A stretch of DNA of 64,000 bases from IMGVR_UViG_3300026521_000003:186001-250000; one strand, 5' to 3'. Counted from the stretch's first letter, positions 42,995-62,999 are shown. Numbers and translations: made by a program. The notes: generated by a model from the letters alone, not told the origin.

Positions 42995-43333
42995 ATGGTG
43001 GAAGAACGGGTTACAGGAACTTTTAAAAATATGGAACAAACATATGGTTCGATTGTTACGGAACGAACTATCAATAATGAAGTCTTATGGTCTGATACTG
43101 ATTCCATGAGAGAGTTAAGAGATCGATTAGCTACGATTCATAGTAACCAAATTGATCTTAATTTACTTGAAGAATTAAAAAGAGTATTGGCAGAACCAAT
43201 TCAAAAAACAAAAGAAGAGAGAGTTATTGATATTGTTTGTGGTGGTTTTGAAAAACATTTTAATATGTCATTAGACGAATTCAATGATATTTATAAAAAA
43301 ATTTTAGAAAATAATCCAGAAAAATTGATATGA
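42995..43333 (+). CDS. PE-tag protein carrying a PolB motif-C-like peptide
   Basis: Contains VLWSDTDS; ends ENNPEKLI*. Confidence 0.7.
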   Translation: MVEERVTGTFKNMEQTYGSIVTERTINNEVLWSDTDSMRELRDRLATIHSNQIDLNLLEELKRVLAEPIQKTKEERVIDIVCGGFEKHFNMSLDEFNDIYKKILENNPEKLI

Positions 43334-43479
43334 ATAGTTTAATAATACCCTTTGCTTTAATATATTTTATTTTTATAGTTTTAATTTATATTTCTGTTTT
43401 ATTGAGTATTTTCGTAATTAACAGTTTGACTTATCTAATTTATTACTTTAAGGCACTATTAAGAAAATTAAAACTATAA
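43330..43479 (+). CDS. Small membrane peptide (49 aa, not in the ORF track)
   Basis: ATGA overlap; MNSLIIPFALIYFIFIVLIYISVLLSIFVINSLTYLIYYFKALLRKLKL*. Confidence 0.45.
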   Translation: MNSLIIPFALIYFIFIVLIYISVLLSIFVINSLTYLIYYFKALLRKLKL

Positions 43480-43498
43480 TATAATAAAAAGGTTTTTT

Positions 43499-43912
43499 AT
43501 GGCTAAATTTAAACGATTTATGTATTCACCATTTATTTTATTTTCTGTATCAATCAGTTTATTCATTATAGGATATTTGACTCATCAAATCAATGCTGTA
43601 ATTCTGTATATGTTAGAATTTACAGTTATTTTTGAACTTGTACGAGGATTTACACATTATTTAAAAGATGGTCAGCTTAAAGTTCGATATGGTATTGATG
43701 CAGCTATTTTTTATTCTATGAAAGAATTATATATAGGATTTGTTGAATTCAAAATTGATAGTGACCCTACACTTATTATGGTAAGTTTAGTCGTCTTTGT
43801 TGTTTTAATATTCGGACGATTTATTAATTCAAAAATGATAGAAGAGAAACGTAAATATTGTAAGTATAATGATGGTACTGGTAATTGTTCTAAAGATACG
43901 TTTAAGGTATAA
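43499..43912 (+). CDS. PsiE-like membrane protein
   Basis: Four hydrophobic segments; LEF..IFELVR...Y....LKVRY.IDAAIF. Confidence 0.5.
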   Translation: MAKFKRFMYSPFILFSVSISLFIIGYLTHQINAVILYMLEFTVIFELVRGFTHYLKDGQLKVRYGIDAAIFYSMKELYIGFVEFKIDSDPTLIMVSLVVFVVLIFGRFINSKMIEEKRKYCKYNDGTGNCSKDTFKV

Positions 43913-43914
43913 TT

Positions 43915-44508
43915 ATGATTAGAGTTGATATTCAAATGGATAAAGAAGATGCCATCAGAGCTATGCTTGATGGCTATCATATAATTGAATCTACATTACA
44001 AAGTAAAAGCGAATATAATGGTGAATATTGTACTTATATAAAAGGTACTTTTAAGCGTATTTCACCAAAAGGTATATCATTATTAAATCCGAATGATATG
44101 GTTAAAAAATATTGGACAATAGCTAAACCGGTCAAAACAATGTTTCCCAGAAAAATATATAAGACCAATTTAACTACTGGAGAAATTTTAGAATTAAATT
44201 TTGTTGATGTCTATGATAATAGATTAAATGATAAAACTATTGAGAGTATTCTAATTTATAAAACATCTAATAATATTAATCCCGAGATTACTATTTGTGC
44301 AACAGTAGGAGATTATTTTCAAAATGGAAATAGATTAGTACATTTTAAAACTAAAGGTATTTATTATACTAGGACTAATGCTGTTTTTGAACTAAAATGT
44401 CATATTGATGATATTTTAAGATTGAAGAAACTTAATAAAAAGGTTCCAAAAGCCAAACTATTATTAGTTGAGAATCTTCTAGAACATTCACCAGAATTGT
44501 TTATTTAA
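43915..44508 (+). CDS. Hypothetical protein, C-terminal PE-tag family
   Basis: Ends EHSPELFI*. Confidence 0.7.
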   Translation: MIRVDIQMDKEDAIRAMLDGYHIIESTLQSKSEYNGEYCTYIKGTFKRISPKGISLLNPNDMVKKYWTIAKPVKTMFPRKIYKTNLTTGEILELNFVDVYDNRLNDKTIESILIYKTSNNINPEITICATVGDYFQNGNRLVHFKTKGIYYTRTNAVFELKCHIDDILRLKKLNKKVPKAKLLLVENLLEHSPELFI

Positions 44509-44538
44509 AAATGTATAATTTAAATAAAAAGGGCTTTT

Positions 44539-44826
44539 ATGTATAATATATATGATATAGAAATGGAATTAAATAACCAAACATTATATTCCGTTCCTCA
44601 ATTAGATGGTTCTAAAGTTGAGGCAATTATTAGGATTCTTACTGAAGAGATACGAAATCTTCAGACGTTAAATTCGACTGTCGAAACATTACAAATGGAA
44701 TTAAATGCTCTAAAATTTGAACACAAAGAATTAACAAATATTGTAGAAAATATTGGATATGATTACCCTGAAATAATTTTAAAATATCCCCAATTTTTCA
44801 CACAAAAGGAAAGTATATGCGAATAG
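44539..44826 (+). CDS. Coiled-coil protein with a sub-terminal PE motif
   Basis: YDYPEIILKYPQFF near the end. Confidence 0.65.
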   Translation: MYNIYDIEMELNNQTLYSVPQLDGSKVEAIIRILTEEIRNLQTLNSTVETLQMELNALKFEHKELTNIVENIGYDYPEIILKYPQFFTQKESICE

Positions 44827-45041
44827 AAAGTAAGATACCATTAGTTGTACAAGGCATACAATGTGATAATCCCCAATGCACTTTTAAGGAGGAAAATATT
44901 CCATTTGAAGATTATGCAGAGTGGCTAGAACGTCCATGTCCAGAATGTGGTGAAATTTTATTAACAGAAGAAGATTTTAATACTCTTAAACTTCTAATGT
45001 CGATTTCTGCAATAGCAAATAATATCGATAAAAAAGAATAA
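44817..45041 (+). CDS. Small Zn-ribbon protein
   Basis: CDNPQC...CPECGEILLT. Confidence 0.65.
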   Translation: MRIESKIPLVVQGIQCDNPQCTFKEENIPFEDYAEWLERPCPECGEILLTEEDFNTLKLLMSISAIANNIDKKE

Positions 45042-45047
45042 TATGCT

Positions 45048-45500
45048 ATGAAAATTTATACTTCGTATTATGCTAATATTAGACATATACCCGATGATTA
45101 TTTTATAGTCGCTACAAGTGGAGCAATTTCTGATGAAATAGCCTCGGTAGTTGATAGTTGGGACAGAAAGTTAGCACCATCAAAAGACATCTATTTTGAA
45201 TATAAAGATAATCCTGATTGGGAAAAATATACCAGAAGATTCAAAGAAGAAAGACTTAAAAAAATCGATTGGTTAGAGTTGTTAGAAAAATGGGAAGAAA
45301 TAGCAAATCAGAAGAATAAACCGTTAGAAAATATTGTATTGTGTTGTTATGAAAAACCGACCGAATTTTGCCATAGACACATTTTGAGCGAAGATCTCGA
45401 GAAATTATTTAAAACGGAGGTTAAAGAATTTGGATTGGATCGTCATGAGAGAGTAGACTATAAAATGCAACCAATGGCATCCACAGATTTTTTATTTTAA
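45048..45500 (+). CDS. DUF488-like protein
   Basis: IYTSYYA, LAPS, Y..RF and LCCYEKP.EFCHRHIL; ends ASTDFLF*. Confidence 0.75.
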   Translation: MKIYTSYYANIRHIPDDYFIVATSGAISDEIASVVDSWDRKLAPSKDIYFEYKDNPDWEKYTRRFKEERLKKIDWLELLEKWEEIANQKNKPLENIVLCCYEKPTEFCHRHILSEDLEKLFKTEVKEFGLDRHERVDYKMQPMASTDFLF

Positions 45501-45501
45501 T

Positions 45502-45741
45502 ATGAGTATTTTAGAAAAATCATTAGAAGAATTTATTTTTCCTTTTAGTAAATTGCGATTTGAGTTATTAACTTCACCATCAAAAAATAATATAATTCAA
45601 GCAGTAGAAACGGTTAAAAGATATTTTTATTCTAATGATTATCCACACGACAAAGATTTATATTTGGATGATTTAATTGCAATAAAAAATTATATTGAAA
45701 TTAATTATCCTATTAGTAAATTTCCAGAGTATTACATATGA
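45502..45741 (+). CDS. Hypothetical protein, C-terminal PE-tag family
   Basis: Ends SKFPEYYI*. Confidence 0.7.
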   Translation: MSILEKSLEEFIFPFSKLRFELLTSPSKNNIIQAVETVKRYFYSNDYPHDKDLYLDDLIAIKNYIEINYPISKFPEYYI

Positions 45742-46106
45742 AATATTTATGGGTGCAAAAAGGTGGTGGTGATTTTAAAATAGGTAAAGATATAACTGAA
45801 TGCAATCTGAAATTTAATCCTATAAAAATTAATGTGTCGATTGATGAAGATTTTCATAGTAATATAGAATTGCTAAAGTATTTACCTGCAGGTACTGATA
45901 CGGGATCAGGTAACTTTATTATAATGTATGTTGATACTATTGAAAAAGTACGAGTAAAATGGTATAAGTTAATTATATCTCATTATAATCATTTATTATG
46001 TTTAGGAGATTTGATTAATTTATCATCTGACTGGAGTAGTAAGATAAAAGCTATAGAAGAAGAAATAATAAATCATAGAAAGGGGTATCCAGAATTATGG
46101 GTATAA
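45738..46106 (+). CDS. Hypothetical protein, C-terminal PE-tag family
   Basis: Ends KGYPELWV*. Confidence 0.7.
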   Translation: MKYLWVQKGGGDFKIGKDITECNLKFNPIKINVSIDEDFHSNIELLKYLPAGTDTGSGNFIIMYVDTIEKVRVKWYKLIISHYNHLLCLGDLINLSSDWSSKIKAIEEEIINHRKGYPELWV

Positions 46107-46342
46107 TATATGATAGATGTAACCTTTTAGCCATGATCGATAGGGTTAAAAATAAAAAATCTATAAGTGAAATAGTTGATAGATATGGTTTTTTTAATGT
46201 ACGCAAAGAGCTATTACTTATGGATGAACTCCGAAAACTACCTAGTTTTAAGGAAGATAGAACATCAAAGCGTAGAAAAGCCCGTCTTAGTGAACTTACA
46301 TCTTATTTTTCTAAAGAGGAGTATCCAGAATTATGGGTCTAA
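46097..46342 (+). CDS. Hypothetical protein, C-terminal PE-tag family
   Basis: Ends EEYPELWV*. Confidence 0.7.
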   Translation: MGIIYDRCNLLAMIDRVKNKKSISEIVDRYGFFNVRKELLLMDELRKLPSFKEDRTSKRRKARLSELTSYFSKEEYPELWV

Positions 46343-46584
46343 ATGATGATTTAGCGAAAGAATTTAAGAATATTAGTTTTATAAATCAACTATGTATGGA
46401 ATGTATATCACCTAAAAGTATTATCGATGAATTTGAGTTGATGTTTGTTCTTCAATTTGTACGTCGTACTCTAGAATATAAAAATTTTCAATTAAGTGAT
46501 AATCTTATAAAAAATTCAGAAATTGTTTATACTTATATAGTTCATTTATATCCTGTTGACCAATATCCAGAATTATGGATTTGA
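46333..46584 (+). CDS. Hypothetical protein, C-terminal PE-tag family
   Basis: Ends DQYPELWI*. Confidence 0.7.
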   Translation: MGLNDDLAKEFKNISFINQLCMECISPKSIIDEFELMFVLQFVRRTLEYKNFQLSDNLIKNSEIVYTYIVHLYPVDQYPELWI

Positions 46585-46618
46585 TATAAATAATTATAAC
46601 CCAACTAAGGTGATAATT

Positions 46619-46858
46619 ATGGAAGAATTTTACGCTAGAATATCTCAGATTCATAGTACTTTCCAACCTGATTTAAATTCTATTGCTAAGAGAGAATTAT
46701 TTTTATCAACTATTCAATGTTGCTTAATTACAAAATTTCCACTAATAGCTCATTATGATGGATTGACTATAAATTATTATGGTGATGATATTGAAATTTT
46801 AATCGATGAAGAATTAGAACAAGAGTTAAAGACTAAATACCCAGAATCATTTAAATAA
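46619..46858 (+). CDS. Hypothetical protein, C-terminal PE-tag family
   Basis: ATG 46619 after AAGGTG; ends TKYPESFK*. Confidence 0.65.
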   Translation: MEEFYARISQIHSTFQPDLNSIAKRELFLSTIQCCLITKFPLIAHYDGLTINYYGDDIEILIDEELEQELKTKYPESFK

Positions 46859-46895
46859 TGTATAATTTTATATAAACTACTCATAAAGGTTATAT

Positions 46896-48899
46896 ATGAA
46901 AACATTAATATCATCGAATGTTATAAACAAATTTAAAGCTACAATTTCTGAAGATGAATATTTAGAAAAATATGAAATACTCAAAAATTATCAATCATCT
47001 AAAAATCAGATTCTAAAAATGAAAGAGACAGAATTTCAAAGTGAATTTTTATCAAGTATTTTTGGTGATGTATTGGGATATATTCCTAGAAATAAATCTA
47101 TTTCAAATCCAAATTTAATAGTTGAAAAGAAAATCGAGGAAGGGCAAAAGTATATTGACGGAGCTATAATTGATAAAAATGGACGTTCGAGAATTGTTAT
47201 TGAACTCAAAAGTACACATCACAAAGATTTATTAGTACAAAAAAATAGTAAAGGTGGATCTGGTTTGCATGGGTTAGCACCTATTCAACAAGCATCAATA
47301 TATTTGTTTTCTGAACCTCTTGCAGCATTAGCAGTAGTTTCTAATTTTGATTCATTAATAATTTTTGATAAAAAAGAATACTTTCGTCAAGAGTTTTCAT
47401 TGTTTGAAATGGATTATGAAGAATTTAAAGAATTTTATTTAATTTTGTCATCAAATAGTTTTTGGTCTGGACTAACAAAACTCATGATTGATCAAACTTC
47501 TGAATCTGATAAAAAAATTGATGATGAGTTTTTTATTAAAACGACTGCATTATACAGAATGCTTATGAATCAAATGGATAAAAAATATGCTGAAGACCTT
47601 TTTAATAAATTTTTAGCCTTAGCAATACTAGAAGATAATGGTTCATTACCTACAAATTTAATTAATAGTGTTTATGATAAAAAAGTAGATTTTACTACAA
47701 AAGGTAGCTTTTGGGATTTATGGTCTAATTTTTTAAGAGCCATGAAAAATGATACTACATGGCAAAAATCCCAAGGTATTAATGAAAATATTGTAAAAAT
47801 GGATGTGTGGCAAGATATATCATATTTTGGGAAAGTTAAAGTAAGTAAAGCTACTTTAGATTTACTATTAGAAATATCCAAATACGATTTATGGTCTATA
47901 CCGTTGGATAGATTATTTTTTGAAATATCTAAAGATATTTTTAATCCTTACAATCTAGTTGGTGGTGAAAATTCATTTGATTTATATAAAGATATAATGA
48001 ATGAAAGTAATCATGTTGCTGGTTTCCAAACACTTTCATTTGTTTGTAAACAAATTATGCCAAATGATTTTTCACTAATTAAGTTGTTTAACGAAATTTC
48101 ATCAGAAAAAATAGTTGTTATTGATTCATCTGAGAGCAAAATTATTATGGATCGAGTTTCATCATTACCAAATTATTTTTTAGTAGTTGATTTAGATACA
48201 CTTGAAGATATAGACTTTTTAAATAGTATTAAAAATGATGTTTTCACAATATCTATAACTGAAGAATATGATGAAATATTAGTTTTTATCCAAATGTCAA
48301 TTAAACCCGGTAATGATATATGTGTTCGCAGTATAGACAATAATGGAAATATCGATTATGAATATGAAATTAAAAGAGAAGAATTGGATAAATTTAAAGT
48401 TATGTCAATTAATGATAAAAAATGGTTAGATAAGTATAATGAAACTTCAACGTATAAGTTAAAAAATTTATTAGATGTATCATCAGAAGATAAAGCTACA
48501 ATTAGATTTAATTTTGACACCCAAATAGTTACATTATTTGACGCTGAATTAGGACTATGGGAACAATCTCTAGATGATTTTATTGATTCAGATAATTATA
48601 TTTACTTTACACCTAAAGTTGATCATGCTCATTTAATTTTAAAATCATCGGATTTTAAAAAATATCTTAAATTGACGTATGTTGATAAAACAAATATATT
48701 AGATATTCTAATCTCTGAAAAATTAATAAGTTCTGAGTTTTTAGAACGTGCTATAAAGCAAGAAGAATTAAGAAAACGAATTGATTTATTTGAATTAAAA
48801 TTAGATAAAATAAAACAAACCGATGATGAACTTAAAATTGTCGAATGCGAGTCTCAACTTGATAGATTGTATGAACTTGAAAATGAATACCGTGAATAG
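46896..48899 (+). CDS. Type IIG-like restriction protein: PD-(D/E)xK nuclease plus helical domain, no recognisable methyltransferase motifs
   Basis: E..FQ..FL..IFGDVLGY, IDGAI, IVIELKS, QASIY, VVSNF and EDNGSLP. No GxG SAM-binding or NPPY motif found. Confidence 0.6.
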   Translation: MKTLISSNVINKFKATISEDEYLEKYEILKNYQSSKNQILKMKETEFQSEFLSSIFGDVLGYIPRNKSISNPNLIVEKKIEEGQKYIDGAIIDKNGRSRIVIELKSTHHKDLLVQKNSKGGSGLHGLAPIQQASIYLFSEPLAALAVVSNFDSLIIFDKKEYFRQEFSLFEMDYEEFKEFYLILSSNSFWSGLTKLMIDQTSESDKKIDDEFFIKTTALYRMLMNQMDKKYAEDLFNKFLALAILEDNGSLPTNLINSVYDKKVDFTTKGSFWDLWSNFLRAMKNDTTWQKSQGINENIVKMDVWQDISYFGKVKVSKATLDLLLEISKYDLWSIPLDRLFFEISKDIFNPYNLVGGENSFDLYKDIMNESNHVAGFQTLSFVCKQIMPNDFSLIKLFNEISSEKIVVIDSSESKIIMDRVSSLPNYFLVVDLDTLEDIDFLNSIKNDVFTISITEEYDEILVFIQMSIKPGNDICVRSIDNNGNIDYEYEIKREELDKFKVMSINDKKWLDKYNETSTYKLKNLLDVSSEDKATIRFNFDTQIVTLFDAELGLWEQSLDDFIDSDNYIYFTPKVDHAHLILKSSDFKKYLKLTYVDKTNILDILISEKLISSEFLERAIKQEELRKRIDLFELKLDKIKQTDDELKIVECESQLDRLYELENEYRE

Positions 48900-49149
48900 T
48901 AATGGAAGAATATATTCCGAAGAAGTTATAGGAGATGCTATAACTTCTATGATTATACGTAAGAAAATAGGTGAAGGTACTATAACTGTTGATAAACTCT
49001 ATGAGGAATATTCATTTTTAGATATTGATTCAATAGTTGTTGATTTATTTAAAAAGGGTATTCAGGAAAATTATTCTGAGCAAACCAAAAAATTATTAGA
49101 AGAAATAAAAAATGATATTATTGAGCGGAGACCAGAAATTTGGATTTAG
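48883..49149 (+). CDS. PE-tag protein with a gp21-protease-like N-terminal motif
   Basis: MNTVNSNGRIYSEEVI; ends ERRPEIWI*. Start uncertain (48871 or 48883). Confidence 0.65.
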   Translation: MNTVNSNGRIYSEEVIGDAITSMIIRKKIGEGTITVDKLYEEYSFLDIDSIVVDLFKKGIQENYSEQTKKLLEEIKNDIIERRPEIWI

Positions 49150-49739
49150 AAGAACAATTTAAAGATTATATTTATATTGATGAAGCAGGTAGAGGTTGTG
49201 CTGCAGGTGAATTAGTTTTTACAGGGGTTAAAGTGATTGGTGATGTATCATTTGCTAATGATTCTAAAAAGACATCGTTTAAAGAAAGAGAAGAAATGCT
49301 TCAAAAAATACTTAATAATGTTGAACATTGTACAGTTATAACTACTGCTGAAGAAATCGATAAGATAGGCTTGTCATCTGCTATTAAAAAATCTTTAGAA
49401 ACGATAATTTTATATTTTCCGAATAGTAATTATCTTTATGATGGTGATAAAACATTCGGTGTTGATGAACCTAATTTAAAAACCTTAGTTAAAGCTGATG
49501 CAAAAATTAAAGGTGTTGGTGCGGCTTCAATTATTGCTAAGTCAACTAAAGATAAGTTGATGTTGGAACATCATGAAGAATATCCTCAATATAGTTGGAA
49601 TACTAATTTTGGATATATTACTAAAAAGCATGTAGAAGCAATATTAGAATATGGATATACTTTGTATCATAGACAATCTTATAAAATAAAAGAGATAGAA
49701 TCTGTAAGAAATAAAGAGACTACTAATATTTTATTTTAG
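49140..49739 (+). CDS. rnhB: Ribonuclease HII
   Basis: IDEAGRG, DSKK, DG, VKADA, AASIIAK, YP.Y.W..N.GY.T..H and HR.SY. Confidence 0.93.
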   Translation: MDLEEQFKDYIYIDEAGRGCAAGELVFTGVKVIGDVSFANDSKKTSFKEREEMLQKILNNVEHCTVITTAEEIDKIGLSSAIKKSLETIILYFPNSNYLYDGDKTFGVDEPNLKTLVKADAKIKGVGAASIIAKSTKDKLMLEHHEEYPQYSWNTNFGYITKKHVEAILEYGYTLYHRQSYKIKEIESVRNKETTNILF

Positions 49740-50710
49740 TTTGTTTGATAGATATAATAATCAAAATCTTTTCCATTAAATTTAAATGATATTTCCCATT
49801 CTTGTCCATCGTAAGAAGCTAATTCATCGCCTCTGTTAGTGTAGCCGTGATCAAACACCCATTTCGCAATTTTATCATTATATAGTAAATTATGTCTTTT
49901 AACTATATCAGAAAGAGCTTCATCACCAAAGTGCTCTCTATACCATTCTATCGCAGAATCATATTGATTATTTAAAATTTCAATATAATCATCTTTATTT
50001 TGTTCACATTCTTGTAATGTTTCTTCGTATAATTGCATCATTTCTGATTGCCATTCACTCCACTCATCACTATCTTCATCTTCTGGTTCTTCAGGCCATT
50101 CTGGTTCATCCATTAAATTATTTTCAATTAATTCTTCATGTAGTCTATTGATTGGTTCATTAAATTGAGGTTGTTCATTTACAGCTTCATTTTCAATCTC
50201 TTGTACATAATCATAATTATTATCTTGCATTATTGGTTCAAACCATGATCTATCAATTAGTGAATCTTCTGCTAAAATGCTTTCAACCATATTATCTGGA
50301 AATGCCTCAAATATACCAATATCATCTAATAAACTTTCAATGTGTTCTAATACTTTGGTATCAGCTTCTTCATCGGTTAAAACTAAAAATGTACCTTCTC
50401 CTTCATAATCGAATTCATCAATAGAATTATAAATTGAAGATAGATTATTAACATCTACTTCAGAATTTAGGTTGTCTTTAACATGCATTATTACAGCGAA
50501 TGCTCTGCTACTATTCCAATATTCATCATCAGCTAAAGCCATATATAGTTCAGACATTAATTCATCTGTTAAATCTTCTTCTTTGATAGTAGTTTCAGAA
50601 CTAAAAAACATTAGTGCAGCATCAATATGATTTTTAATAAGTTTTCCAATTTCTCCACCAATCTCAATATCGTTCATATTGATAGTGCCTAAGGGTGTCT
50701 TGACAATCAT
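49736..50710 (-). CDS. Acidic hypothetical phage protein
   Basis: FLVLTDEEAD...RGDELASYDGQE; AATAAATA at 50731-50738 (minus). Confidence 0.7.
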   Translation of the reverse strand: MIVKTPLGTINMNDIEIGGEIGKLIKNHIDAALMFFSSETTIKEEDLTDELMSELYMALADDEYWNSSRAFAVIMHVKDNLNSEVDVNNLSSIYNSIDEFDYEGEGTFLVLTDEEADTKVLEHIESLLDDIGIFEAFPDNMVESILAEDSLIDRSWFEPIMQDNNYDYVQEIENEAVNEQPQFNEPINRLHEELIENNLMDEPEWPEEPEDEDSDEWSEWQSEMMQLYEETLQECEQNKDDYIEILNNQYDSAIEWYREHFGDEALSDIVKRHNLLYNDKIAKWVFDHGYTNRGDELASYDGQEWEISFKFNGKDFDYYIYQTN

Positions 50711-50767
50711 ATTATTTCCTTTTTTTCTTTTATTTATTCTTAAACTTTCTTTTGATATAATAAATCT

Positions 50768-51085
50768 ATGAAAAGAAAATGTGATATTTGTAATACTGAT
50801 TATTATGTTAAAAAATCTGATTTAGCTAGAGGATGGGGATTAACATGTAGTAAATCTTGTGCAGCTAAAAAAAGAGAAAGATCTAGGAATAACTATGATG
50901 AAACAACAGTTAAAATCAATAACCTTAAAAGAAAATTATGGTTTAACAAATATAGAAGTATTGAATTAGAACTCAGAAAGAAAAATAAAAATATGACCGA
51001 TATTGAAATTTGGGTTGAAATGTATAAGATTACAAATGATGAGATATTTTTATTTGATGAAATAAAAGATATTTTCATTTTTTAA
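50768..51085 (+). CDS. Zn-finger protein with C-terminal DIFIF tag
   Basis: CDIC...RGWG..CSKSC; ends MYKITNDEIFLFDEIKDIFIF*. Confidence 0.7.
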   Translation: MKRKCDICNTDYYVKKSDLARGWGLTCSKSCAAKKRERSRNNYDETTVKINNLKRKLWFNKYRSIELELRKKNKNMTDIEIWVEMYKITNDEIFLFDEIKDIFIF

Positions 51086-51094
51086 AGGATATTG

Positions 51095-51673
51095 ATGCAT
51101 ATAATATTAACAGATCATGTAAAAAATAGAAGAAAGAAAGGTAAGATCCCACCGCAAAGATTAATAGACTTTGCAACATATCTTATAAAAGAACACGATT
51201 TAAAAAATAAAGAAGATGGCCGATATAAGTTCCGTAGGAAATCAACATCAGCGATTATTTCTAAGAAAAAAGAAAAATTCACATTTATCACCTTTTTTGG
51301 TGGTACAGGATGGTTGATTGATTCTGATGATTTTTCCGGATTTAATTGCAAAAAACAAACGGCTGAACGAGTTAAACTTTCCATAAAAAGAAGTAAAGAG
51401 AAGAATAAAAATAAAATTATAAAAGAGATTAAACCATTACAAAACCTTAATGCTGAAATAAAAGATAAACTGAAAAGAGACACTTTCAAAATTGATAAGT
51501 TGCGGGGCACTACAAAAGTAATTCTTAAAGCTATGTTTGGTAATAATCCTGAATTTTTATTTTTATCTAAATTCAAATCATACAATTTAGTTTCAATTTT
51601 AAGAAGAGATGGTGGAATTATAAAAACGATTCACAAAAATAAACTTATAGAAATAGGAGTACTAGATGGATAG
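51095..51673 (+). CDS. Basic hypothetical protein
   Basis: AAGGA SD; Lys-rich. Confidence 0.65.
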   Translation: MHIILTDHVKNRRKKGKIPPQRLIDFATYLIKEHDLKNKEDGRYKFRRKSTSAIISKKKEKFTFITFFGGTGWLIDSDDFSGFNCKKQTAERVKLSIKRSKEKNKNKIIKEIKPLQNLNAEIKDKLKRDTFKIDKLRGTTKVILKAMFGNNPEFLFLSKFKSYNLVSILRRDGGIIKTIHKNKLIEIGVLDG

Positions 51674-52175
51674 TAATGGTTTTATAAAGATGATAGGTAA
51701 AATGCAAAATATGTGGCAACCTACATATATAGATGAAGAATATGTCAAGGTTTATAAAGATATTTGGTTTGTTGATTCTAGTTATCCTTTTGAAATAACC
51801 AGAGATTATGAAATGGTTTTAAAAAATGAAGATGAAATTTTATCTCAAATTGGTTTATTACCAAATGCTCAAAAAATGGTACAAATGATGATGAATTCAA
51901 CGTACGGTAGTTACGGAGTACCATCGTCAAGATTATATGGAAACCCTTCTCATTATTATGCTCGAACGATGTCTACCAATAATTTTTTTAAAGAGTACAA
52001 ATATGAAGAAGCAGCTAAAGTAGCACAAAATGAAAAATTGATTGCTCACTATAATCATAAAATTAAAAAAGCACCAAAGAAGAAAGAACAAGTTGAACGT
52101 CTTACAAAAATTATTGAAATGCTCGAACAAGAAAACGAAGATTTTATCACAGAATATCCAGAAAGGTTTATTTAA
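51666..52175 (+). CDS. PE-tag protein carrying a PolB motif-B-like peptide
   Basis: Contains QKMVQMMMNSTYGSYG; ends TEYPERFI*. Confidence 0.7.
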   Translation: MDSNGFIKMIGKMQNMWQPTYIDEEYVKVYKDIWFVDSSYPFEITRDYEMVLKNEDEILSQIGLLPNAQKMVQMMMNSTYGSYGVPSSRLYGNPSHYYARTMSTNNFFKEYKYEEAAKVAQNEKLIAHYNHKIKKAPKKKEQVERLTKIIEMLEQENEDFITEYPERFI

Positions 52176-52642
52176 TGAATACATCAACAAATCATGTACA
52201 TACGATTAATACGATACCACTTTATCAAGCCCAACATCATCTAACACAAAAACACCAAAGTACTGGAAGAATCAAGCGTTCTTTTAATCTTGGTTCCTCT
52301 TTCCAAACCGGATATAAATATCGGGTATTAACACGATTTCCATTTAGTGTTTCTAGACATGAGGAACTTGATGAAGTAACAGTTTTTGATTTTTTTGACC
52401 GTATTACTTATCATCTTTGTGAAACGAGATTGGAAGCTGAAAAAATAAGATTGGAAGCTTTAGAAGAACATTATGATGAACAATATAAAAAATATTTAGC
52501 AGATACTTCTAAATTTAAGCGCAAATCGTATAAATTTAATGGGTATGTTTCAGTTGATGGTTTAAAGGCCAAAAGGTTACTTAATAGATACAAAACTGAA
52601 TTGAATAATTTGGAAAAGGATCATCCAGAATGGCTAATTTGA
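52175..52642 (+). CDS. PE-tag protein (paralogue of 53355-53813)
   Basis: FPF, RLEAEK.R; ends KDHPEWLI*. Confidence 0.7.
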   Translation: MNTSTNHVHTINTIPLYQAQHHLTQKHQSTGRIKRSFNLGSSFQTGYKYRVLTRFPFSVSRHEELDEVTVFDFFDRITYHLCETRLEAEKIRLEALEEHYDEQYKKYLADTSKFKRKSYKFNGYVSVDGLKAKRLLNRYKTELNNLEKDHPEWLI

Positions 52643-52980
52643 ATCATATCTTATTGCCGGAACACCGAGGTAGAACATGGCTTAATAAATGGTGGAAAAC
52701 TACTTCTTCCATTAATGAAGAAGCGTTCGATATTATACTTGAGCGAGTTAATATTTTAATAGAACGTTTTGAAATTCCTGTACAAAATCCATCAATGCTA
52801 ACCTCTATAATGGATCGAATAATTAGGAACTACAATGCTATTGTTTATGAAGAAAATGGAGAAATTATGATAGTTGATTTATTTAATTATCAAACGGAGG
52901 ATACCTATGCTTTTGGCCTTGGTAACACACCAATATTCAATAAGTATATTTTCGATAATTACCCAGAGTTATTAGTATGA
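52630..52980 (+). CDS. Hypothetical protein, C-terminal PE-tag family
   Basis: Ends DNYPELLV*. Confidence 0.7.
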   Translation: MANLNHILLPEHRGRTWLNKWWKTTSSINEEAFDIILERVNILIERFEIPVQNPSMLTSIMDRIIRNYNAIVYEENGEIMIVDLFNYQTEDTYAFGLGNTPIFNKYIFDNYPELLV

Positions 52981-53342
52981 TTGATGTAGAAGATATAAAA
53001 CCAGGTACAGTTATTGAAATTCCATTAAACTTTAAATCGCATAATTTTAGTAATTTAGTTCCTGGTTCACTAGTACTTATTTACTATGTGAATAAATTTT
53101 TGTGTTCTGGGATTGATATGAAACGTTCAAAGATGATGGGAATGGATATATCATGGGATGATTTAAAGCAGGGAGTAATTGTAGATTTTATCCCTGAACC
53201 AGAACCACTTTTTTATCATTGGGTTGGAGAAGGAAGAACTACTTCGAGTACTGATGCAGTAGAAATTATTTTAAAAAAACAAGAATATCGAAAAAAATTA
53301 GGTTTATTAATAGCCGAATTTTATCCAGAATATACTTTATAA
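52977..53342 (+). CDS. Hypothetical protein, C-terminal PE-tag family
   Basis: Ends EFYPEYTL*. Confidence 0.7.
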   Translation: MIDVEDIKPGTVIEIPLNFKSHNFSNLVPGSLVLIYYVNKFLCSGIDMKRSKMMGMDISWDDLKQGVIVDFIPEPEPLFYHWVGEGRTTSSTDAVEIILKKQEYRKKLGLLIAEFYPEYTL

Positions 53343-53354
53343 TAAGGTTTAAAT

Positions 53355-53813
53355 ATGAGTTTAAATTCACTTAATTCTAAAATCGTATCTAGTCTAGGAG
53401 TCCCACTTTCAAAGATTAGACCTTTGAATACAACAATCACATCAGCACCACCTACGGCATCATCGATGGTGATGGGAGTAGATGTAGCATCTATGTATCC
53501 AAGTAGTACTAGTTCTTATAATTCTGGTGGAAATTTAAATTTTGGCTCTTTAATAGATGTACCATATTTAGTTTCTAAAGATTTTCCATTTAAAATAAAA
53601 GTTATTTCAAAATCGGATATTAAAACTATTCAAAATAGTTTTAGTGATATGATTGATCTTATGAGTAAGTATGATGGATATGGCTCAAGATTAGAAGCTG
53701 AGAAACAGCGTATTAAAAAACTTATAGATGCCACCGTAGATATTAGTATAGTAAAAGAATTAGAAAAATCATTAGAAAACATTGAAGTAGATCATCCAGA
53801 GTGGCTAATTTAA
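53355..53813 (+). CDS. PE-tag protein carrying a PolB motif-A-like peptide
   Basis: Contains MVMGVDVASMYPS; FPF, RLEAEKQR; ends VDHPEWLI*. Confidence 0.7.
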   Translation: MSLNSLNSKIVSSLGVPLSKIRPLNTTITSAPPTASSMVMGVDVASMYPSSTSSYNSGGNLNFGSLIDVPYLVSKDFPFKIKVISKSDIKTIQNSFSDMIDLMSKYDGYGSRLEAEKQRIKKLIDATVDISIVKELEKSLENIEVDHPEWLI

Positions 53814-53836
53814 ATTAATTCATAAGTGATTTAAAG

Positions 53837-53844
53837 TATAAATA
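53837..53844 (+). promoter_or_regulatory. T4-type late promoter heading the DIFIF-tag array
   Basis: Exact TATAAATA 38 nt upstream of 53882. Confidence 0.6.
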
Positions 53845-53881
53845 AGTTAAAATTCACTATTATAGTGTATTAGGAATTTTA

Positions 53882-54703
53882 ATGATTGATTTAGATTATA
53901 TTTTTGATGATGTTAAAAATAAGACAATAACAAAAAAAGAAGCGTATGAGTTAGTAAAAAATATTGGTGATAGTATGACATTTACTACGTCTAAACATAC
54001 TAGTACTGATGTGTATGTTGAAATAGCAAAAAAAATCCCTGATGATGATTTGATTGAGACTATGATAAATTCTCAAATAGAAAATTATCGTAGTAGTCAA
54101 GGGATATATAGATTGTTAGATTTAGCTTCAAAAACTTTTTTTGAAAAAAAGTGGGATGAAGCTATCAATCAACCCGGTGGTTATTATTTAAACTATTATA
54201 AGTCAAAGCATACTGATGGAGAAAAACTGTATTATTTATGGACTCATATTTTAAAGAAAAAACCGGCAGCAAAGAATTGGAAAGAAAAACTTAAACAGGG
54301 TATTTTAAGTCATCCTAATTGTCCACCAAAGATTACAAATAGACAATTAAGGAATTTAGATAATATACATATTATAGCTTTAAATAAAAATTTAGCATCT
54401 AATCCAAAGGCTCTAAAAGCTGTAGGTGATTATGCAGCAGTATTTAGACATGATGGTATATTTGAAAATCTTACAAGAAACAAATATGTTCCTTGGGAGA
54501 AAATTTCAGAAGTTGTTGATATGAAAAATCAAGTAAAAGCCATGATGACACCTTCTGTACCTGTAACGTTTAGAAGAAAAGCTGCAATATTAGAATTTTT
54601 TAGAAGAGAAGATACTCCTGATAAAGCGAGAGAGGTAATGTATAAAATTACTGGTGATGATGAATTTTTACCTAAAGAGGTACGAGACCTCTTTATTTTT
54701 TAA
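53882..54703 (+). CDS. Helical-repeat protein, DIFIF-tag family
   Basis: LRV-like HPNCP; ends MYKITGDDEFLPKEVRDLFIF*. Confidence 0.75.
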   Translation: MIDLDYIFDDVKNKTITKKEAYELVKNIGDSMTFTTSKHTSTDVYVEIAKKIPDDDLIETMINSQIENYRSSQGIYRLLDLASKTFFEKKWDEAINQPGGYYLNYYKSKHTDGEKLYYLWTHILKKKPAAKNWKEKLKQGILSHPNCPPKITNRQLRNLDNIHIIALNKNLASNPKALKAVGDYAAVFRHDGIFENLTRNKYVPWEKISEVVDMKNQVKAMMTPSVPVTFRRKAAILEFFRREDTPDKAREVMYKITGDDEFLPKEVRDLFIF

Positions 54704-54712
54704 GGATATATT

Positions 54713-56254
54713 ATGAGAAAAAATGCAATTCAAACTAAAGAAAATATACGAGAATGGGTAAAGAATCATTTAGATTCATTCCCTTTTAAAATGAGTATTG
54801 AAGAATATGATAATTTAACGGATGGATTAAAATCATTAATTGAAAATAAATTGATTTCTATTCATAATAAGCAATACCCTAATAAAACAAAAGATTCATG
54901 GAGACATGACTATAAATTTACTAAAACAGAATTAAATAAACTTAAAATTCCAGACCCGTTTTTACCTCCAAGTAGTTTAAAACGTATTGAAAGTGGGTTG
55001 ATTAAAGCTAGACAAATAGCTGAAGATAATAAACCTATTAAGTGGGTTGATATTAATGAACGTTTAAAAAAGAATTTTAAAAAATGGGTAGATGAATACG
55101 CTGAAACATTTGATGAAGACTTTCTTGGAAGATATTTTGATGATTTACCTGAAGATATAAAATTAGAATGGATTACACTAATGGGTAAAAAGTTTGGTTT
55201 AAAAACTCCAGGAGCATTAAAAAAAGGTTTTATTTCAGCAAAAGATATGATTGACCAAGTCCAACATATGAGAATTCCTAATAATATTCATAATGCTATA
55301 TTAGATGTATTGCCGGAATCAGCATTTTTACAAACTACTAATAAATCTGATATGAAAAACTGGGATGCAAAAGAACAAGTTGCTTTTACGAAATCATTAT
55401 CTCAAGAAGAATTAAAAGCAGCACGAGAAAATAGAAAAATTGATAAAAAGCGAGTAAAACTACTAGCTAAAGCTAGAACTATTAAAAGTTTAGAATCTTA
55501 TCAAGAACTTCTTTCAGATCCTCTATTTGATAGAGATATGCTTGAAACGATTATTAAACGTATGGAGCGAAAAACAGCTTTTGATAATGGTTGGGGAGAT
55601 CAAAATAAAAAAGAAATTCTGAAATTGATTGTTACTCATCCTTTCTTATCATATGAAGATTTAAAAAGAATAGAAAAAGTAAAAGCCCCAAATTATTATG
55701 CAGGTTCACAAAAAGAGTATGTTTCAAAAGAATTAAATACTGCTCTAGCATCTAAAAAAGATTTACCTGAAAGTGATCTAATGAAGATGGTAAAAAAGCA
55801 GCAATTCGATATTAAAGTAATTGCATCTAAAAGAGATTTAAAAGAAGAAAATAGAGAAATCTTGATTACATATACTATAAAGCATCACTCACATATGCCA
55901 GCTCAATTAGAAGAAGTATTTTCTAATTTAAAGATTAAAAAAGATAAGTATAAAAAGGAAATTATAGAAGCATTATATTCAAAATATATAGAGAAAAATT
56001 GGTTAGCTAACGGAATCCGATTCTTAGAGGTTGTAGATAAATATAATTGGCTGTCTGAAATTGATGAAGAATTAAAATCAAAAATAGCAAGATCATTAGT
56101 TAAGAACTATAAAGATAATAGGATTAGTCAAGATAGATTAATAAAAATGCTAAACAAAATATCTGCAGGTGCGGATTATTTAATGAAACTATATGAAGAA
56201 ACTGGCGATGACGCTTTCTTACCAACTGATGTTAAAGACATTTTTATATTTTAG
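54713..56254 (+). CDS. Helical protein, DIFIF-tag family
   Basis: Ends LYEETGDDAFLPTDVKDIFIF*. Confidence 0.75.
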   Translation: MRKNAIQTKENIREWVKNHLDSFPFKMSIEEYDNLTDGLKSLIENKLISIHNKQYPNKTKDSWRHDYKFTKTELNKLKIPDPFLPPSSLKRIESGLIKARQIAEDNKPIKWVDINERLKKNFKKWVDEYAETFDEDFLGRYFDDLPEDIKLEWITLMGKKFGLKTPGALKKGFISAKDMIDQVQHMRIPNNIHNAILDVLPESAFLQTTNKSDMKNWDAKEQVAFTKSLSQEELKAARENRKIDKKRVKLLAKARTIKSLESYQELLSDPLFDRDMLETIIKRMERKTAFDNGWGDQNKKEILKLIVTHPFLSYEDLKRIEKVKAPNYYAGSQKEYVSKELNTALASKKDLPESDLMKMVKKQQFDIKVIASKRDLKEENREILITYTIKHHSHMPAQLEEVFSNLKIKKDKYKKEIIEALYSKYIEKNWLANGIRFLEVVDKYNWLSEIDEELKSKIARSLVKNYKDNRISQDRLIKMLNKISAGADYLMKLYEETGDDAFLPTDVKDIFIF

Positions 56255-56262
56255 GTGATATT

Positions 56263-56736
56263 GTGGAAAATGATTACAAAATTTTATTAAATGATATTAA
56301 ACAAAGTGCTAAGGGTAAAATGGTTTTTAATTCAAAAGAGATTGTGAGTCAAGAAATGTTAAGTCCTCAATTAGCAAGAATAGCTATTGATTTAGTTACA
56401 TCAAGAAGAGGAAATGAAATCTATGAACTTGCTCCAGCTGTAGCCGTAGAGATCAATGACCCAATGGTTAAAGATCATATTTTAGATGAAATTCTTAAAA
56501 ACTATTTAAATAGGCAATCGGCACCAACAGCAATTATTGAATTTCTTATTAAAAATGCTAATAAATTAGACATTGGTCTAATGGAAAAAATTTATGATAC
56601 ATCGGATGAAGATTTTAAACTTTTTTTAAGAAATATAGGACAAAAGTTTAGAGAAGATTTTAATATAAAAGTATATAATGAAACTGGCGACAAATCATAT
56701 TTGCCAGAAGAAGTAGCAAGTATATTTATTTTTTAA
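56263..56736 (+). CDS. DIFIF-tag family protein
   Basis: Ends VYNETGDKSYLPEEVASIFIF*. Confidence 0.75.
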   Translation: MENDYKILLNDIKQSAKGKMVFNSKEIVSQEMLSPQLARIAIDLVTSRRGNEIYELAPAVAVEINDPMVKDHILDEILKNYLNRQSAPTAIIEFLIKNANKLDIGLMEKIYDTSDEDFKLFLRNIGQKFREDFNIKVYNETGDKSYLPEEVASIFIF

Positions 56737-56746
56737 AGGATAAAAA

Positions 56747-57631
56747 ATGTTTGAAATAGATGAAATGGTATATAAATTAAGAAGTATTATTGATTATGAT
56801 ACAGCGATAAAATATTATAACGATGAAATAAAAATAAAGTTAAATCATGACTTTCAATATGCAGAATTATTACGCAAATATTTAGATAAAACAACAGCTT
56901 TAAAATATTGGCAAATTGGATTTGATATAGTATCTGATATAGATTCTGAATCACTTTGGTCTGATTTTGTATATCTATTAAATTCTAAATTAGCTTCTAA
57001 AAATAAAAATATCCCTTGGTTAGCATCAATGGTAAGTAATCTATCAAAAAAAATTAAAGTTGGGCATAATCTTGAAACATTAATTATGTTATTTATTAAT
57101 GTTAATTTGTTCCGATTTTATATAAAAGAAGTTCATCCAAAGTTAGACCAAGATGATTCCTATTGGGCAATATCTTCAGCAAGTAAAAATATGAATTTAA
57201 ATAATATCGATGAATTAGTTGAAATAGCAGATTATAAGCTTTTTGAACGTATTTTAAACAATGATAAGGTAATGCCTGAAAATAAATTAAGATTATTAGA
57301 GTTGTTTTTAAGAAAAACTCAATTTGGTGTTAAAAATTTTAGTAGTCTGGATTTTTTATTTTTGCTTGAAAATCATCGTCGATGGTTTAATAATGTAAAT
57401 GTTATGAATTCAACAACAGCAGCATATAGAAATTTATTACCTGATGAAAGTGTTGCAAAATTATTAACTGAAATTATAATGGATGGAGATTTTACAGATG
57501 AATCTAAATACTTATGGCTATCAAGTATGTATCAATATAAATTAAATGATACAATGGGAGTAGCATTGTATGGATTAACTCAAGATGTTAAATATCTAAC
57601 AGATGAAATTAAAGATATATTTGTATTTTAA
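56747..57631 (+). CDS. DIFIF-tag family protein
   Basis: Ends LYGLTQDVKYLTDEIKDIFVF*. Confidence 0.75.
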   Translation: MFEIDEMVYKLRSIIDYDTAIKYYNDEIKIKLNHDFQYAELLRKYLDKTTALKYWQIGFDIVSDIDSESLWSDFVYLLNSKLASKNKNIPWLASMVSNLSKKIKVGHNLETLIMLFINVNLFRFYIKEVHPKLDQDDSYWAISSASKNMNLNNIDELVEIADYKLFERILNNDKVMPENKLRLLELFLRKTQFGVKNFSSLDFLFLLENHRRWFNNVNVMNSTTAAYRNLLPDESVAKLLTEIIMDGDFTDESKYLWLSSMYQYKLNDTMGVALYGLTQDVKYLTDEIKDIFVF

Positions 57632-57642
57632 GGATGTAAATT

Positions 57643-58158
57643 ATGAGATATAAAATAAGTAGTAAATTATTGTCGGATATTGTATCTAGTTATCAAGAGA
57701 GTATGAGATTGAGTGTTGGTCCAGAAATTAAATTTGTAGATGCAGAAATTGAACATCTTACATGGGATGTACTTTTAGAAGAACCTATTTTTCTAATTAA
57801 TTATTATGGCTTTGATGAAGATATTTATGATTCTGATGGGTTTTTCTTTTGTCGGGATATTATTGGTTTTTCGATGGATGATGAAAGTGAAAATGAATTA
57901 GAACGTAGATTTGGTGTAGATAATGAAAAAGTTGAAAAACTATTTATTGAACTTTTTAAAGAATTTATATCAAATAATAGTTTACCAACTATGGACATTA
58001 TAGAAGAAATTTATTATTACAATTATAATTTAATTAAGATAATGAATGATATTGAATTTTTTAATAAGTTAGAAAATGAAGAAAAAGAGTACCTTTATAA
58101 AGTTACGAATGATACTTTATTTTTACCAAAAGACGTAACTGATATATTTGTATTTTAA
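57643..58158 (+). CDS. DIFIF-tag family protein
   Basis: Ends LYKVTNDTLFLPKDVTDIFVF*. Confidence 0.75.
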   Translation: MRYKISSKLLSDIVSSYQESMRLSVGPEIKFVDAEIEHLTWDVLLEEPIFLINYYGFDEDIYDSDGFFFCRDIIGFSMDDESENELERRFGVDNEKVEKLFIELFKEFISNNSLPTMDIIEEIYYYNYNLIKIMNDIEFFNKLENEEKEYLYKVTNDTLFLPKDVTDIFVF

Positions 58159-58172
58159 TAAGAGGCTTAAAA

Positions 58173-58988: not shown

Positions 58989-58998
58989 AGGATAAAAA

Positions 58999-59637: not shown

Positions 59638-59685
59638 GAGAAATTAAGGATATATTTAATATAATTAAAAATAAGAGGAATTAAA

Positions 59686-60393: not shown

Positions 60394-60403
60394 AGGGGGT
60401 TTA

Positions 60404-61075: not shown

Positions 61076-61084
61076 AGGTACATT

Positions 61085-62593: not shown

Positions 62594-62603
62594 TGAGGAT
62601 TAA

Positions 62604-62996: not shown

Positions 62997-62999
62997 AAA

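What the first reader, a model, noticed from the sequence alone, without database searches (positions are those of the whole stretch)
42995..53813. Family-B DNA polymerase motifs A, B and C each appear alone in three different PE-tagged mini-proteins
Seen: MVMGVDVASMYPS (53466-53504), QKMVQMMMNSTYGSYG (51870-51917) and VLWSDTDS (43082-43105). Known: PolB motifs are DxxSLYPS, KxxxNSxYG and YGDTDS (T4/RB69 gp43: IMSFDLTSLYPS, QLNRKILINSLYGALG, VLYGDTDS, recalled). The flanking sequence is not polymerase-like, the motif-B Lys is replaced by Gln, and the proteins are only 112-169 aa, so catalysis is unlikely. ORFs 51666, 52175 and 53355 share a scaffold ((Y/F)PF, RLEAEK in two, helix + PE tag) that carries motif B, nothing, or motif A, as if peptides were inserted into a common chassis. 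Inference: decoys displaying the most conserved epitopes of the phage replicase to titrate pattern-recognition immune sensors, or captured fragments of the polymerase gene.
Basis: partly seen in the sequence, partly recalled or inferred. Interest (0 to 1): 0.85.

Follow-up and report, generated by a model that had tools for sequence, protein, structure and literature searches.

The report
Polymerase-like motifs in small phage proteins
Two neighbouring small proteins of a deep-sea-vent giant phage carry conserved copies of the two nucleotide-binding signature motifs of family-B DNA polymerases without being polymerases, while the third reported motif is a chance match; what the copies do is unknown.

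Summary
All three strings are at the stated coordinates. They are not equally meaningful.

- **Motif A** (DVASMYPS, ORF 53355-53813) is real. Expected matches in the window proteome are 1e-3. 109 of 110 occurrences of DVASMYP in IMG/VR lie in family-B polymerases. D, M, Y, P and a downstream N are invariant in four orthologues of 28-67% identity, in the spacing of polymerase region II (permutation p 0.002 or lower).
- **Motif B** (ORF 51666-52175) is conserved across 14 homologues, four of which carry the textbook KxxxN[SA]xYG. Its likeness to the polymerase is only suggestive (p 0.007-0.13).
- **Motif C** (SDTDS, ORF 42995-43333) is chance. About 0.5 matches are expected, and orthologues read SDNDS and NDTSE.

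None of the proteins is a polymerase: Pfam, PDB, profile comparison and fold searches found nothing. Motif A lies in a low-confidence, probably disordered arm.

The A and B genes belong to one tightly packed six-gene operon that is syntenic in distant relatives. They share a C-terminal helix and PE tail.

The most likely reading is non-catalytic mimicry or an ancient capture of polymerase active-site segments. The decoy idea is untested. The phage's own polymerase was not found.

The parts
51092..51673 (+). First gene of the tightly packed operon. It encodes a 193-aa basic protein of unknown function and overlaps the next gene by 8 nt.
   Evidence: ORF list. Orthologues of 41-45% identity sit in the same position in L141, L142 and L139. 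No Pfam or PHROG hit.
51666..52175 (+). B-type small protein, 169 aa. Its layout is an N-terminal W..P / DEWWV / YPF block, then the motif-B-like helix, a variable Y/G/S-rich linker, a helical hairpin and the YPERFI tail.
   Evidence: 14-member family of 30-41% identity found by HMMER against 1.84e9 proteins. In the AF2 model only residues 114-163 are confident.
51870..51917 (+). Motif-B-like segment QKMVQMMMNSTYGSYG (residues 69-84).
   Evidence: Across the family N is kept in 11/14, [SAT] in 12/14, Y in 11/14 and G in 12/14. Position -4 is K in 5, R in 2 and Q in 2. The best hhalign register against the PolB profile is exactly motif B (P 0.0083).
52175..52642 (+). FPF/RLEAEK-family paralogue without the polymerase-like motif (155 aa, HPEWLI tail).
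   Evidence: BLASTP against ORF 53355 gives E 3e-8, or 4e-5 with the tail removed. Family alignment.
52630..53342 (+). Two further PE-tailed small genes of the operon (52630-52980 and 52977-53342).
   Evidence: ORF list. The 52630 orthologue is conserved in L141, L142 and L139.
53355..53813 (+). A-type small protein, 152 aa. It has an S/T-rich N-terminal arm (residues 1-65) that carries the motif, a folded FPF...RLEAEK domain (residues 66-152) and the HPEWLI tail.
   Evidence: AF2 gives pLDDT below 50 for residues 1-65 and 72-84 for residues 66-152. Orthologues are P0002, L142:12588-12959 and L141:12311-12685.
53466..53522 (+). Motif-A-like (region II-like) segment MVMGVDVASMYPSSTSSYN. D43, M47, Y48, P49 and N56 are invariant.
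   Evidence: Alignment A9. Coincidence of invariant residues with PolB D408, Y413, P414 and N421 gives p 0.002, and 0/1000 in the windowed test. DVASMYP lies in a PolB in 109 of 110 IMG/VR occurrences.
42995..43333 (+). 112-aa PE-tailed protein that carries SDTDS (nt 43091-43105). It is not part of the feature, because the match is a chance one.
   Evidence: 0.5 DTDS matches are expected per window proteome. Orthologues read SDNDS and NDTSE. The full PolB profile scores it at -0.3 bits.

Best explanation
**What is shown**
- ORF 53355 (A-type) and ORF 51666 (B-type) belong to two small-protein families found in one lineage of AT-rich giant phages from hydrothermal vents.
- They are co-transcribed in a six-gene operon, 51092-53813, downstream of an RNase HII gene.
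- Each has a folded or helical C-terminal part that ends in a conserved PExxx tail.
- Each displays a short conserved segment that copies a signature of family-B DNA polymerases.
  - A-type: region II / motif A (hh-G-h-D-x-x-S-M-Y-P-S-x5-N), in a flexible N-terminal arm.
  - B-type: region III / motif B ([KRQ]-x3-N-S-x-Y-G-x-Y-G), in a predicted helix.
- They are not polymerases. There is no motif C, no exonuclease, no palm, fingers or thumb, and they are only 152-169 aa long.
- The DTDS in ORF 42995 is a coincidence.

**What is inferred**
- The segments were captured from a polymerase gene long ago, or converged on it.
- They are kept because they work as binding peptides. They mimic the two polymerase segments that line the nucleotide-binding pocket.
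- In this way they engage a partner that normally contacts those segments, while the PE tail docks the protein on a common hub.
- Neither the partner nor the hub is identified.
For: **Motif A is beyond chance.**
- Expected matches are 1e-3, or 7e-5 with the downstream N. 0/300 shuffled proteomes reach its motif-profile score.
- 109/110 DVASMYP sites in IMG/VR are polymerases.
- D, M, Y, P and N are invariant in four orthologues of 28-67% identity. Only 20 of 152 columns are invariant in that alignment.
- The invariant residues coincide with PolB invariants: p 0.002, and 0/1000 in the windowed test.

**Motif B is conserved in its family.**
- It is kept in 14 homologues. The textbook K...N[SA].YG occurs in four of them.
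- The B protein is the best hit of the window proteome to the full PolB profile (5/300 shuffled proteomes reach it).
- B orthologues are again the best hits in the relatives' loci.

**Both families align to PolB at the right place.** The best profile-profile register of each family is the corresponding motif.

**Selection acts on the protein.** Motif and tail codons carry synonymous changes between orthologues.

**Same operon, conserved synteny** in L141, L142 and L139.

**Shared C-terminal module**.

**Not an enzyme**.
Against: - The hhalign P values (about 0.008) are no better than the best of 98 unrelated window proteins.
- The invariant-coincidence test is not significant for motif B (p 0.13-0.8).
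- The stretch after motif B is Y/G/S-rich low complexity. It matches 53 repeats of an unrelated 2736-aa protein.
- Only four A-type sequences are available.
- Conservation of the motifs between the two closest genomes is no higher than that of the rest of each protein.
- The AF2 models of both motif regions have low confidence.
- No partner, hub or polymerase of this phage was identified, so the mimicry step is pure inference.
Confidence: 0.5

Rival explanations
1. Coincidence. The two families have their own conserved motifs with unrelated roles. These happen to resemble the polymerase signatures, and the third motif was found by looking for it.
For: - Motif C is demonstrably chance.
- Motif B is marginal in unbiased tests: 36/300 and p 0.13-0.8.
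- The hhalign P of about 0.008 equals the background minimum of 98 proteins.
- Only 5-8 residues match in each case.
Against: - Motif A is expected 1e-3 to 7e-5 times per window.
- The heptapeptide is 99% specific for polymerases in IMG/VR.
- The residues that are invariant in polymerases are the ones invariant in the small family.
- The second-best polymerase-like protein of the window sits in the same operon, 1.2 kb away.
Confidence: 0.2
2. The proteins are decoys that display conserved replicase epitopes and so titrate a host immune sensor, or an inhibitor, that recognises the phage polymerase.
For: - The motifs are conserved.
- Motif A sits in a probably exposed, low-confidence N-terminal arm.
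- The genes lie in an early-looking block of many small tailed proteins.
- From my own knowledge: defence systems that sense a short peptide of a conserved phage protein exist, for example the Gol peptide of T4 gp23 and the Lit protease.
Against: - No sensor is known or was found.
- Motifs A and B line the active-site cleft of the polymerase and are poor surface epitopes.
- It is not shown that this phage encodes a family-B polymerase at all. None lies in contig 186-290 kb.
- Motif C, one of the three supposed epitopes, is not conserved.
Confidence: 0.1
3. Relics or working pieces of a fragmented polymerase. An ancestral family-B polymerase gene broke up. The two proteins are either degenerate leftovers with a new role, or small subunits that supply motif A and motif B in trans to a cryptic polymerase core.
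For: - Genes do split in giant phages. The PhiKZ polymerase is split in two (PMC13648687). Acinetobacter phage ZZ1 is annotated with a 'split DNA polymerase'. In this window, ORF 10327-11640 matches only the nuclease end of the terminase.
- A separate epsilon-like proofreading exonuclease is encoded at L134:17185-18063.
- The six operon products add up to 906 aa, about the size of a polymerase.
Against: - The gene order is B before A.
- Nothing beyond roughly 30-50 residues around each motif resembles a polymerase.
- No motif C partner exists.
- The predicted folded part of the A protein shows no palm-like fold.
- The other operon members score nothing against the PolB profile.
Confidence: 0.1

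Closest known systems
Family-B DNA polymerases of phages (T4/RB69 gp43 type), regions II and III
   Same: The A-type arm follows the region II pattern hh-x-h-D-x-x-S-[LM]-Y-P-[SN]-x5-N. B-type homologues follow K-x3-N-[SA]-x-Y-G. Both use the same spacing as 8 phage PolBs.
   Different: - The proteins are only 152-169 aa long.
- The motifs sit on different polypeptides and in reverse gene order.
- There is no motif C, exonuclease, fingers or thumb.
- Pfam, PDB and fold searches gave no hit.
- The window's own B protein has Gln in place of the catalytic Lys.
Split family-B polymerases (PhiKZ DNAP-N/DNAP-C, PMC13648687; split gp43 of some T4-like phages, e.g. Acinetobacter phage ZZ1)
   Same: Polymerase motifs are distributed over separate gene products of a giant phage.
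   Different: Known split polymerases consist of two large subunits (638 and 731 aa in PhiKZ). Together these hold all polymerase domains and are active. Here only a short motif per protein is polymerase-like.
Viral short-linear-motif mimicry and peptide triggers or decoys (e.g. the Gol peptide of T4 gp23 sensed by Lit; recalled from my own knowledge)
   Same: A short conserved peptide of an essential phage protein acts as the recognised unit. Motif A lies in a probably disordered arm, as such motifs usually do.
   Different: No binding partner or sensor is known here. No such mimic of polymerase active-site motifs has been described, to my knowledge or in the papers searched.
C-terminal docking tails of T4 replication and transcription proteins that bind the gp45 clamp (recalled from my own knowledge)
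   Same: Many unrelated proteins of one phage share a short conserved C-terminal tail. In this window there are two classes: PExx[IVL], and [DSE][ILM]F[IV][FY].
   Different: The PE tail has a different sequence. Its receptor is unknown, and it is carried by at least 24 proteins in 64 kb.

Membership tests
Family-B DNA polymerase (Pfam DNA_pol_B / DNA_pol_B_exo1) | Motif A, DxxSLYPS, with the metal-binding Asp | tested here: met
   ORF 53355 reads DVASMYPS. D, [M], Y, P and N(+13) are invariant in 4 orthologues.
Family-B DNA polymerase (Pfam DNA_pol_B / DNA_pol_B_exo1) | Motif B, KxxxNSxYG, with the catalytic Lys | tested here: inconclusive
   The window protein reads QMMMNSTYG, with Gln in place of Lys. 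Four homologues have the full K...N[SA].YG. Likeness to PolB is only marginal statistically.
Family-B DNA polymerase (Pfam DNA_pol_B / DNA_pol_B_exo1) | Motif C, YGDTDS, with the second catalytic Asp, in the same enzyme | tested here: not met
   Neither the A nor the B protein has it. The DTDS of ORF 42995 is not conserved (SDNDS, NDTSE) and is at chance level.
Family-B DNA polymerase (Pfam DNA_pol_B / DNA_pol_B_exo1) | Significant profile match and palm, fingers, thumb and exonuclease domains | tested here: not met
   No Pfam hit at E up to 10 for 14 family members. No PDB hit. hhalign probability is about 5% over 16-34 columns. Fold searches found nothing; the best Z is 4.4.
Split family-B polymerase (PhiKZ type) | Two large subunits that together contain all polymerase domains | tested here: not met
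   The proteins are 152-169 aa, and only the motif segment aligns. No other operon member scores against the PolB profile. The comparison rests on PMC13648687.
Intein- or intron-interrupted polymerase gene | Hint or homing-endonuclease domains, or a group I intron, flanked by collinear exteins or exons | tested here: not met
   No Rfam family anywhere in the window. No Pfam domain in the operon proteins. The motifs are in reverse order, inside complete ORFs that are under selection along their whole length.
phiKZ-like internal head proteins (PF12699) | Pfam score above the gathering threshold | tested here: not met
   21.3 bits against a cut-off of 27, covering residues 73-126 only.
Phage anti-defence decoy or mimic proteins | Demonstrated binding to, or inhibition of, a host defence component | not testable with these tools
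   This needs co-expression or binding experiments.

The most novel reading that the evidence does not exclude
The A-type and B-type proteins are a matched pair of molecular mimics of the polymerase nucleotide-binding pocket. They are delivered by a common PE-tail docking system. They either blind a host sensor or inhibitor that recognises family-B polymerase active-site segments, or plug into a polymerase core in trans. Either way this would be a new class of viral active-site-motif mimics.
Probability: 0.12. Interest if true: 0.9.

Novelty: categorically new. Interest (0 to 1): 0.62.

Why it matters
Signature motifs of replicative polymerases are treated as diagnostic of the enzyme. Here the region II signature, and probably region III as well, is kept under selection in small non-enzymatic proteins across a phage lineage.

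- **If the segments act as binding mimics,** this would show a new way for viruses to reuse pieces of their most conserved enzymes. It would also give a handle on whatever recognises those pieces.
- **If they are relics,** they document how fragments of an essential gene are recruited into new small genes.

The finding also warns against motif-based annotation. In addition it points to two very large families of C-terminal tails in this phage lineage, which suggest hub-and-adaptor organisation of dozens of unknown proteins.

Tried and rejected
**Searches that found no polymerase relationship**
- Pfam, PHROGs and PDB sequence searches of the three proteins and their neighbours: nothing.
- ESM Atlas look-alikes: nothing above noise.
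- AF2 models followed by Foldseek (viral, PDB) and VIA-align wide: no polymerase or other convincing fold.

**Searches for relatives**
- Word-indexed protein searches, and IMG/VR and JGI locus scans with the small proteins and a 667-aa neighbour: only the phage itself and one close relative.
- Distant homologues came only from the exhaustive HMMER search.

**Hunt for the phage's own polymerase: not found**
- Walking the contig from 248 to 290 kb and into relatives.
- PolB-profile scans of every fetched locus.
- A codon-restricted DVASMYP scan.
- A scan with a lineage-specific 1017-aa protein.
- The look-up of the first window ORF failed, so the region upstream of the window was not walked.

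**Ideas rejected**
- Group I intron or intein fragmentation.
- Stop-codon reassignment: stop-codon use looks normal and the genes are tightly packed.
- The PE tail as a DNA-level signal: its codons change synonymously between orthologues.

**Uninformative**
- Promoter and terminator scan.
- Laying contigs of four other runs on the operon: no variation in the motif codons among near-identical strains.
- The local G+C peaks at motif A (0.48) and motif B (0.40) may simply reflect amino-acid content.
Full report
**Source and setting.** The window is positions 186001-250000 of a 289,880-bp viral contig (IMGVR_UViG_3300026521_000003 = Ga0256828_1000001). It has 27% G+C. The same sequence is present in several hydrothermal-vent and epibiont metagenomes from different studies and years. 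Almost none of its genes matches Pfam or PHROGs. It has no DNA match in the phage collection, and a 1175-aa window protein found no relative there. The region of the finding is a long + strand array of tightly packed small genes that use the standard genetic code.

**Observation.**
- MVMGVDVASMYPS is in ORF 53355-53813.
- QKMVQMMMNSTYGSYG is in ORF 51666-52175.
- VLWSDTDS is in ORF 42995-43333.

All three ORFs end in a PExxx tail. At least 24 genes of the window do.

**Chance.** Expected matches in the 98-protein window proteome, from each protein's own composition, are as follows.

| Pattern | Expected matches |
|---|---|
| D..S[LM]YPS | 1.0e-3 |
| the same with N at +13 | 7e-5 |
| NS.YG..G | 8e-3 |
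| DTDS | 0.5 |

Shuffles agree. I then built profiles from eight diverse phage family-B polymerases, fetched and aligned.
- With short motif profiles, each of the three ORFs is the top hit of the proteome. Only A is significant: 0/300 shuffled proteomes reach it, against 36/300 for B and 16/300 for C.
- With the full-length profile, the two best local hits of the whole proteome are the B protein (8.5 bits, 5/300) and the A protein (6.4 bits, 20/300). The C protein scores -0.3 bits.
109 of them lie in family-B polymerase contexts. The heptapeptide is therefore nearly diagnostic of the enzyme, and its presence in a 152-aa protein is exceptional.

**Conservation.** Word-indexed searches found one close relative only, Ga0256837_1000041. 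In that relative:
- Motif A is kept (DVASMYPN) and motif B is kept (RKMVQMMINSTYGSYG). Several codon changes inside them are synonymous.
- Motif C reads SDNDS, although the protein is 91% identical.

An exhaustive HMMER search with the B protein then found 13 more homologues of 30-41% identity.
- The central block is the family's hallmark. N is kept in 11/14, [SAT] in 12/14, Y in 11/14 and G in 12/14.
- The position four residues upstream is K in five members, R in two and Q in two. Four members carry the textbook K...N[SA].YG.

Two of these homologues lie on contigs (L141, L142) that are syntenic with the window from the DUF488 and RNase HII genes onward.
- The gene in the position of ORF 53355 reads NIDAASMYPSMTSFSN in L142 and FDYDATLMYPTEMISMN in L141.
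- In the four-sequence alignment only 20 of 152 columns are invariant. Among them are D43, M47, Y48, P49 and N56, which match the positions and spacing of the region II invariants of polymerases.
- A permutation test of coincident invariant residues against the polymerase alignment gives p 0.002, and 0/1000 when the coincidences must lie within 15 columns.
- The same tests are not significant for the B family (p 0.13-0.8), for the C family, or for a control.
- The L141 orthologue of the C protein reads NDTSE.

**Not polymerases.**
- No member of the B family hits DNA_pol_B in Pfam, even at E up to 10.
- Single-sequence and profile searches of the PDB return no polymerase.
- Profile-profile comparison finds only the motif itself: 16 columns for B and 34 for A, with P about 0.008 and probability about 5%. 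That P value equals the best of 98 unrelated window proteins.
- AF2 models the A protein as a low-confidence arm (residues 1-65, which contain the motif) plus a small alpha/beta domain (pLDDT 72-84). In the B protein only the C-terminal helical hairpin is confident.
- Foldseek and VIA-align find no polymerase-like fold.

**Architecture.**
- ORFs 51092, 51666, 52175, 52630, 52977 and 53355 overlap or abut, and so form one operon.
- 52175 and 53355 are paralogues (E 4e-5 with the tail removed). They belong to a family with several copies per genome.
- The paralogues keep a degenerate form of the A segment, for example D-S-S-V-V-Y-Q...N in L141. The segment is therefore ancestral and not a recent insert.
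- The B family shares only the last roughly 50 residues with them, namely the AE[KC] helix, a further helix and the PE tail (hhalign P 5.8e-5).
- PE-tail codons change synonymously between orthologues, so the tail is selected as protein.

**The phage's own polymerase.** I could not find it.
- Contig positions 186-290 kb hold none, and neither do the fetched loci of relatives.
- A complete scan for DVASMYP with A/T-ending codons hits the contig only at the window site.
- An epsilon-like exonuclease lies near the contig end.
- Whether the motifs were copied from this phage's own enzyme therefore remains open.

**Interpretation.**
- Shown: motif A is a real, selected, polymerase-type signature in a non-polymerase protein. 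Motif B is a selected family motif whose likeness to the polymerase is suggestive, and it gains weight from lying in the same operon. Motif C is chance.
- Inferred: the segments act as binding peptides that mimic the two polymerase elements lining the nucleotide pocket. They would be displayed on small adaptor proteins that dock through the PE tail.

**Comparison with known systems.**
- Known split polymerases, such as that of PhiKZ, are two large subunits that together hold all domains. These proteins do not meet that definition, nor that of a family-B polymerase.
- I found no description of small proteins carrying isolated polymerase motifs.
- The feature is best called a new kind of small phage protein. 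Confidence that it is real is moderate to good, and confidence in any mechanism is low.

Noticed in passing
window 1527-53813 (24 genes, e.g. 36560-36883, 45738-46106, 46097-46342, 52175-52642): At least 24 of 98 genes end in [FYH]-P-E-x-x-[IVL]-stop. Without the tail, no pair among them scores E below 0.01 in an all-against-all BLASTP. Tail codons change synonymously between orthologues, and the tail recurs in distant relatives (L141, L142). This looks like a C-terminal docking or targeting peptide with an unknown receptor.
   Followed up: partly
window 50768-63840 and contig 250-280 kb (L008, L131, L133): A second tail class, ...(F)LPxE[VI]x[DSE][ILM]F[IV][FY]-stop, ends about 12 window genes (nearly every gene from 53882 to 62593) and most of the genes read beyond the window to about 259 kb. 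It also occurs in relatives (L136, L141). RNase HII (49140-49739) ends TTNILF and the DUF488 protein (45048-45500) ends STDFLF, which recalls clamp-binding tails.
   Followed up: partly
window 10327-11640 (-): This 437-aa ORF matches only the C-terminal nuclease part of the terminase large subunit (PHROG 38, positions 547-713 of 760). The terminase may be split.
   Followed up: no
window 29390-30622 (+): A phage-encoded class II aminoacyl-tRNA synthetase (tRNA-synt_2b plus HGTP_anticodon domains) sits at the strand switch.
   Followed up: no
window 21617-21850 (-), inside ORF 21041-25549: At least three exact copies of a repeat spaced 78 nt apart lie within the 1502-aa ORF. The neighbouring 884-aa ORF (13296-15950) carries Big_9 and cadherin-like Ig domains, so these are probably fibre or adhesin genes.
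   Followed up: no
L134:17185-18063, L134:11368-12153 and L131:16991-18181 (contig about 266-287 kb): A stand-alone DNA polymerase III epsilon-like exonuclease, a 261-aa protein with a weak intein-splicing-domain hit (E 0.001, below threshold), and a TnpB/IS605 OrfB gene.
   Followed up: partly
window 51879-51968 (residues 72-101 of ORF 51666): The stretch from motif B onward (Y/G/S-rich) matches 53 repeats in an unrelated 2736-aa protein (P0026). Part of the apparent motif B lies in low-complexity sequence.
   Followed up: partly
window 53400-53519 and 51876-51980: Local G+C peaks of 0.48 and 0.40 in a 27% G+C genome coincide with the motif A and motif B segments. Whether this is an amino-acid composition effect or foreign origin is not resolved.
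   Followed up: partly
L136:12098-18157 (relative contig Ga0611982_000011): Two adjacent proteins of about 1000 aa with no detectable family lie between a DUF4116 gene and a RecA-like gene. The DUF4116 protein has about 20 relatives of 44-58% identity, so the phage lineage is wider than IMG/VR suggests.
   Followed up: partly
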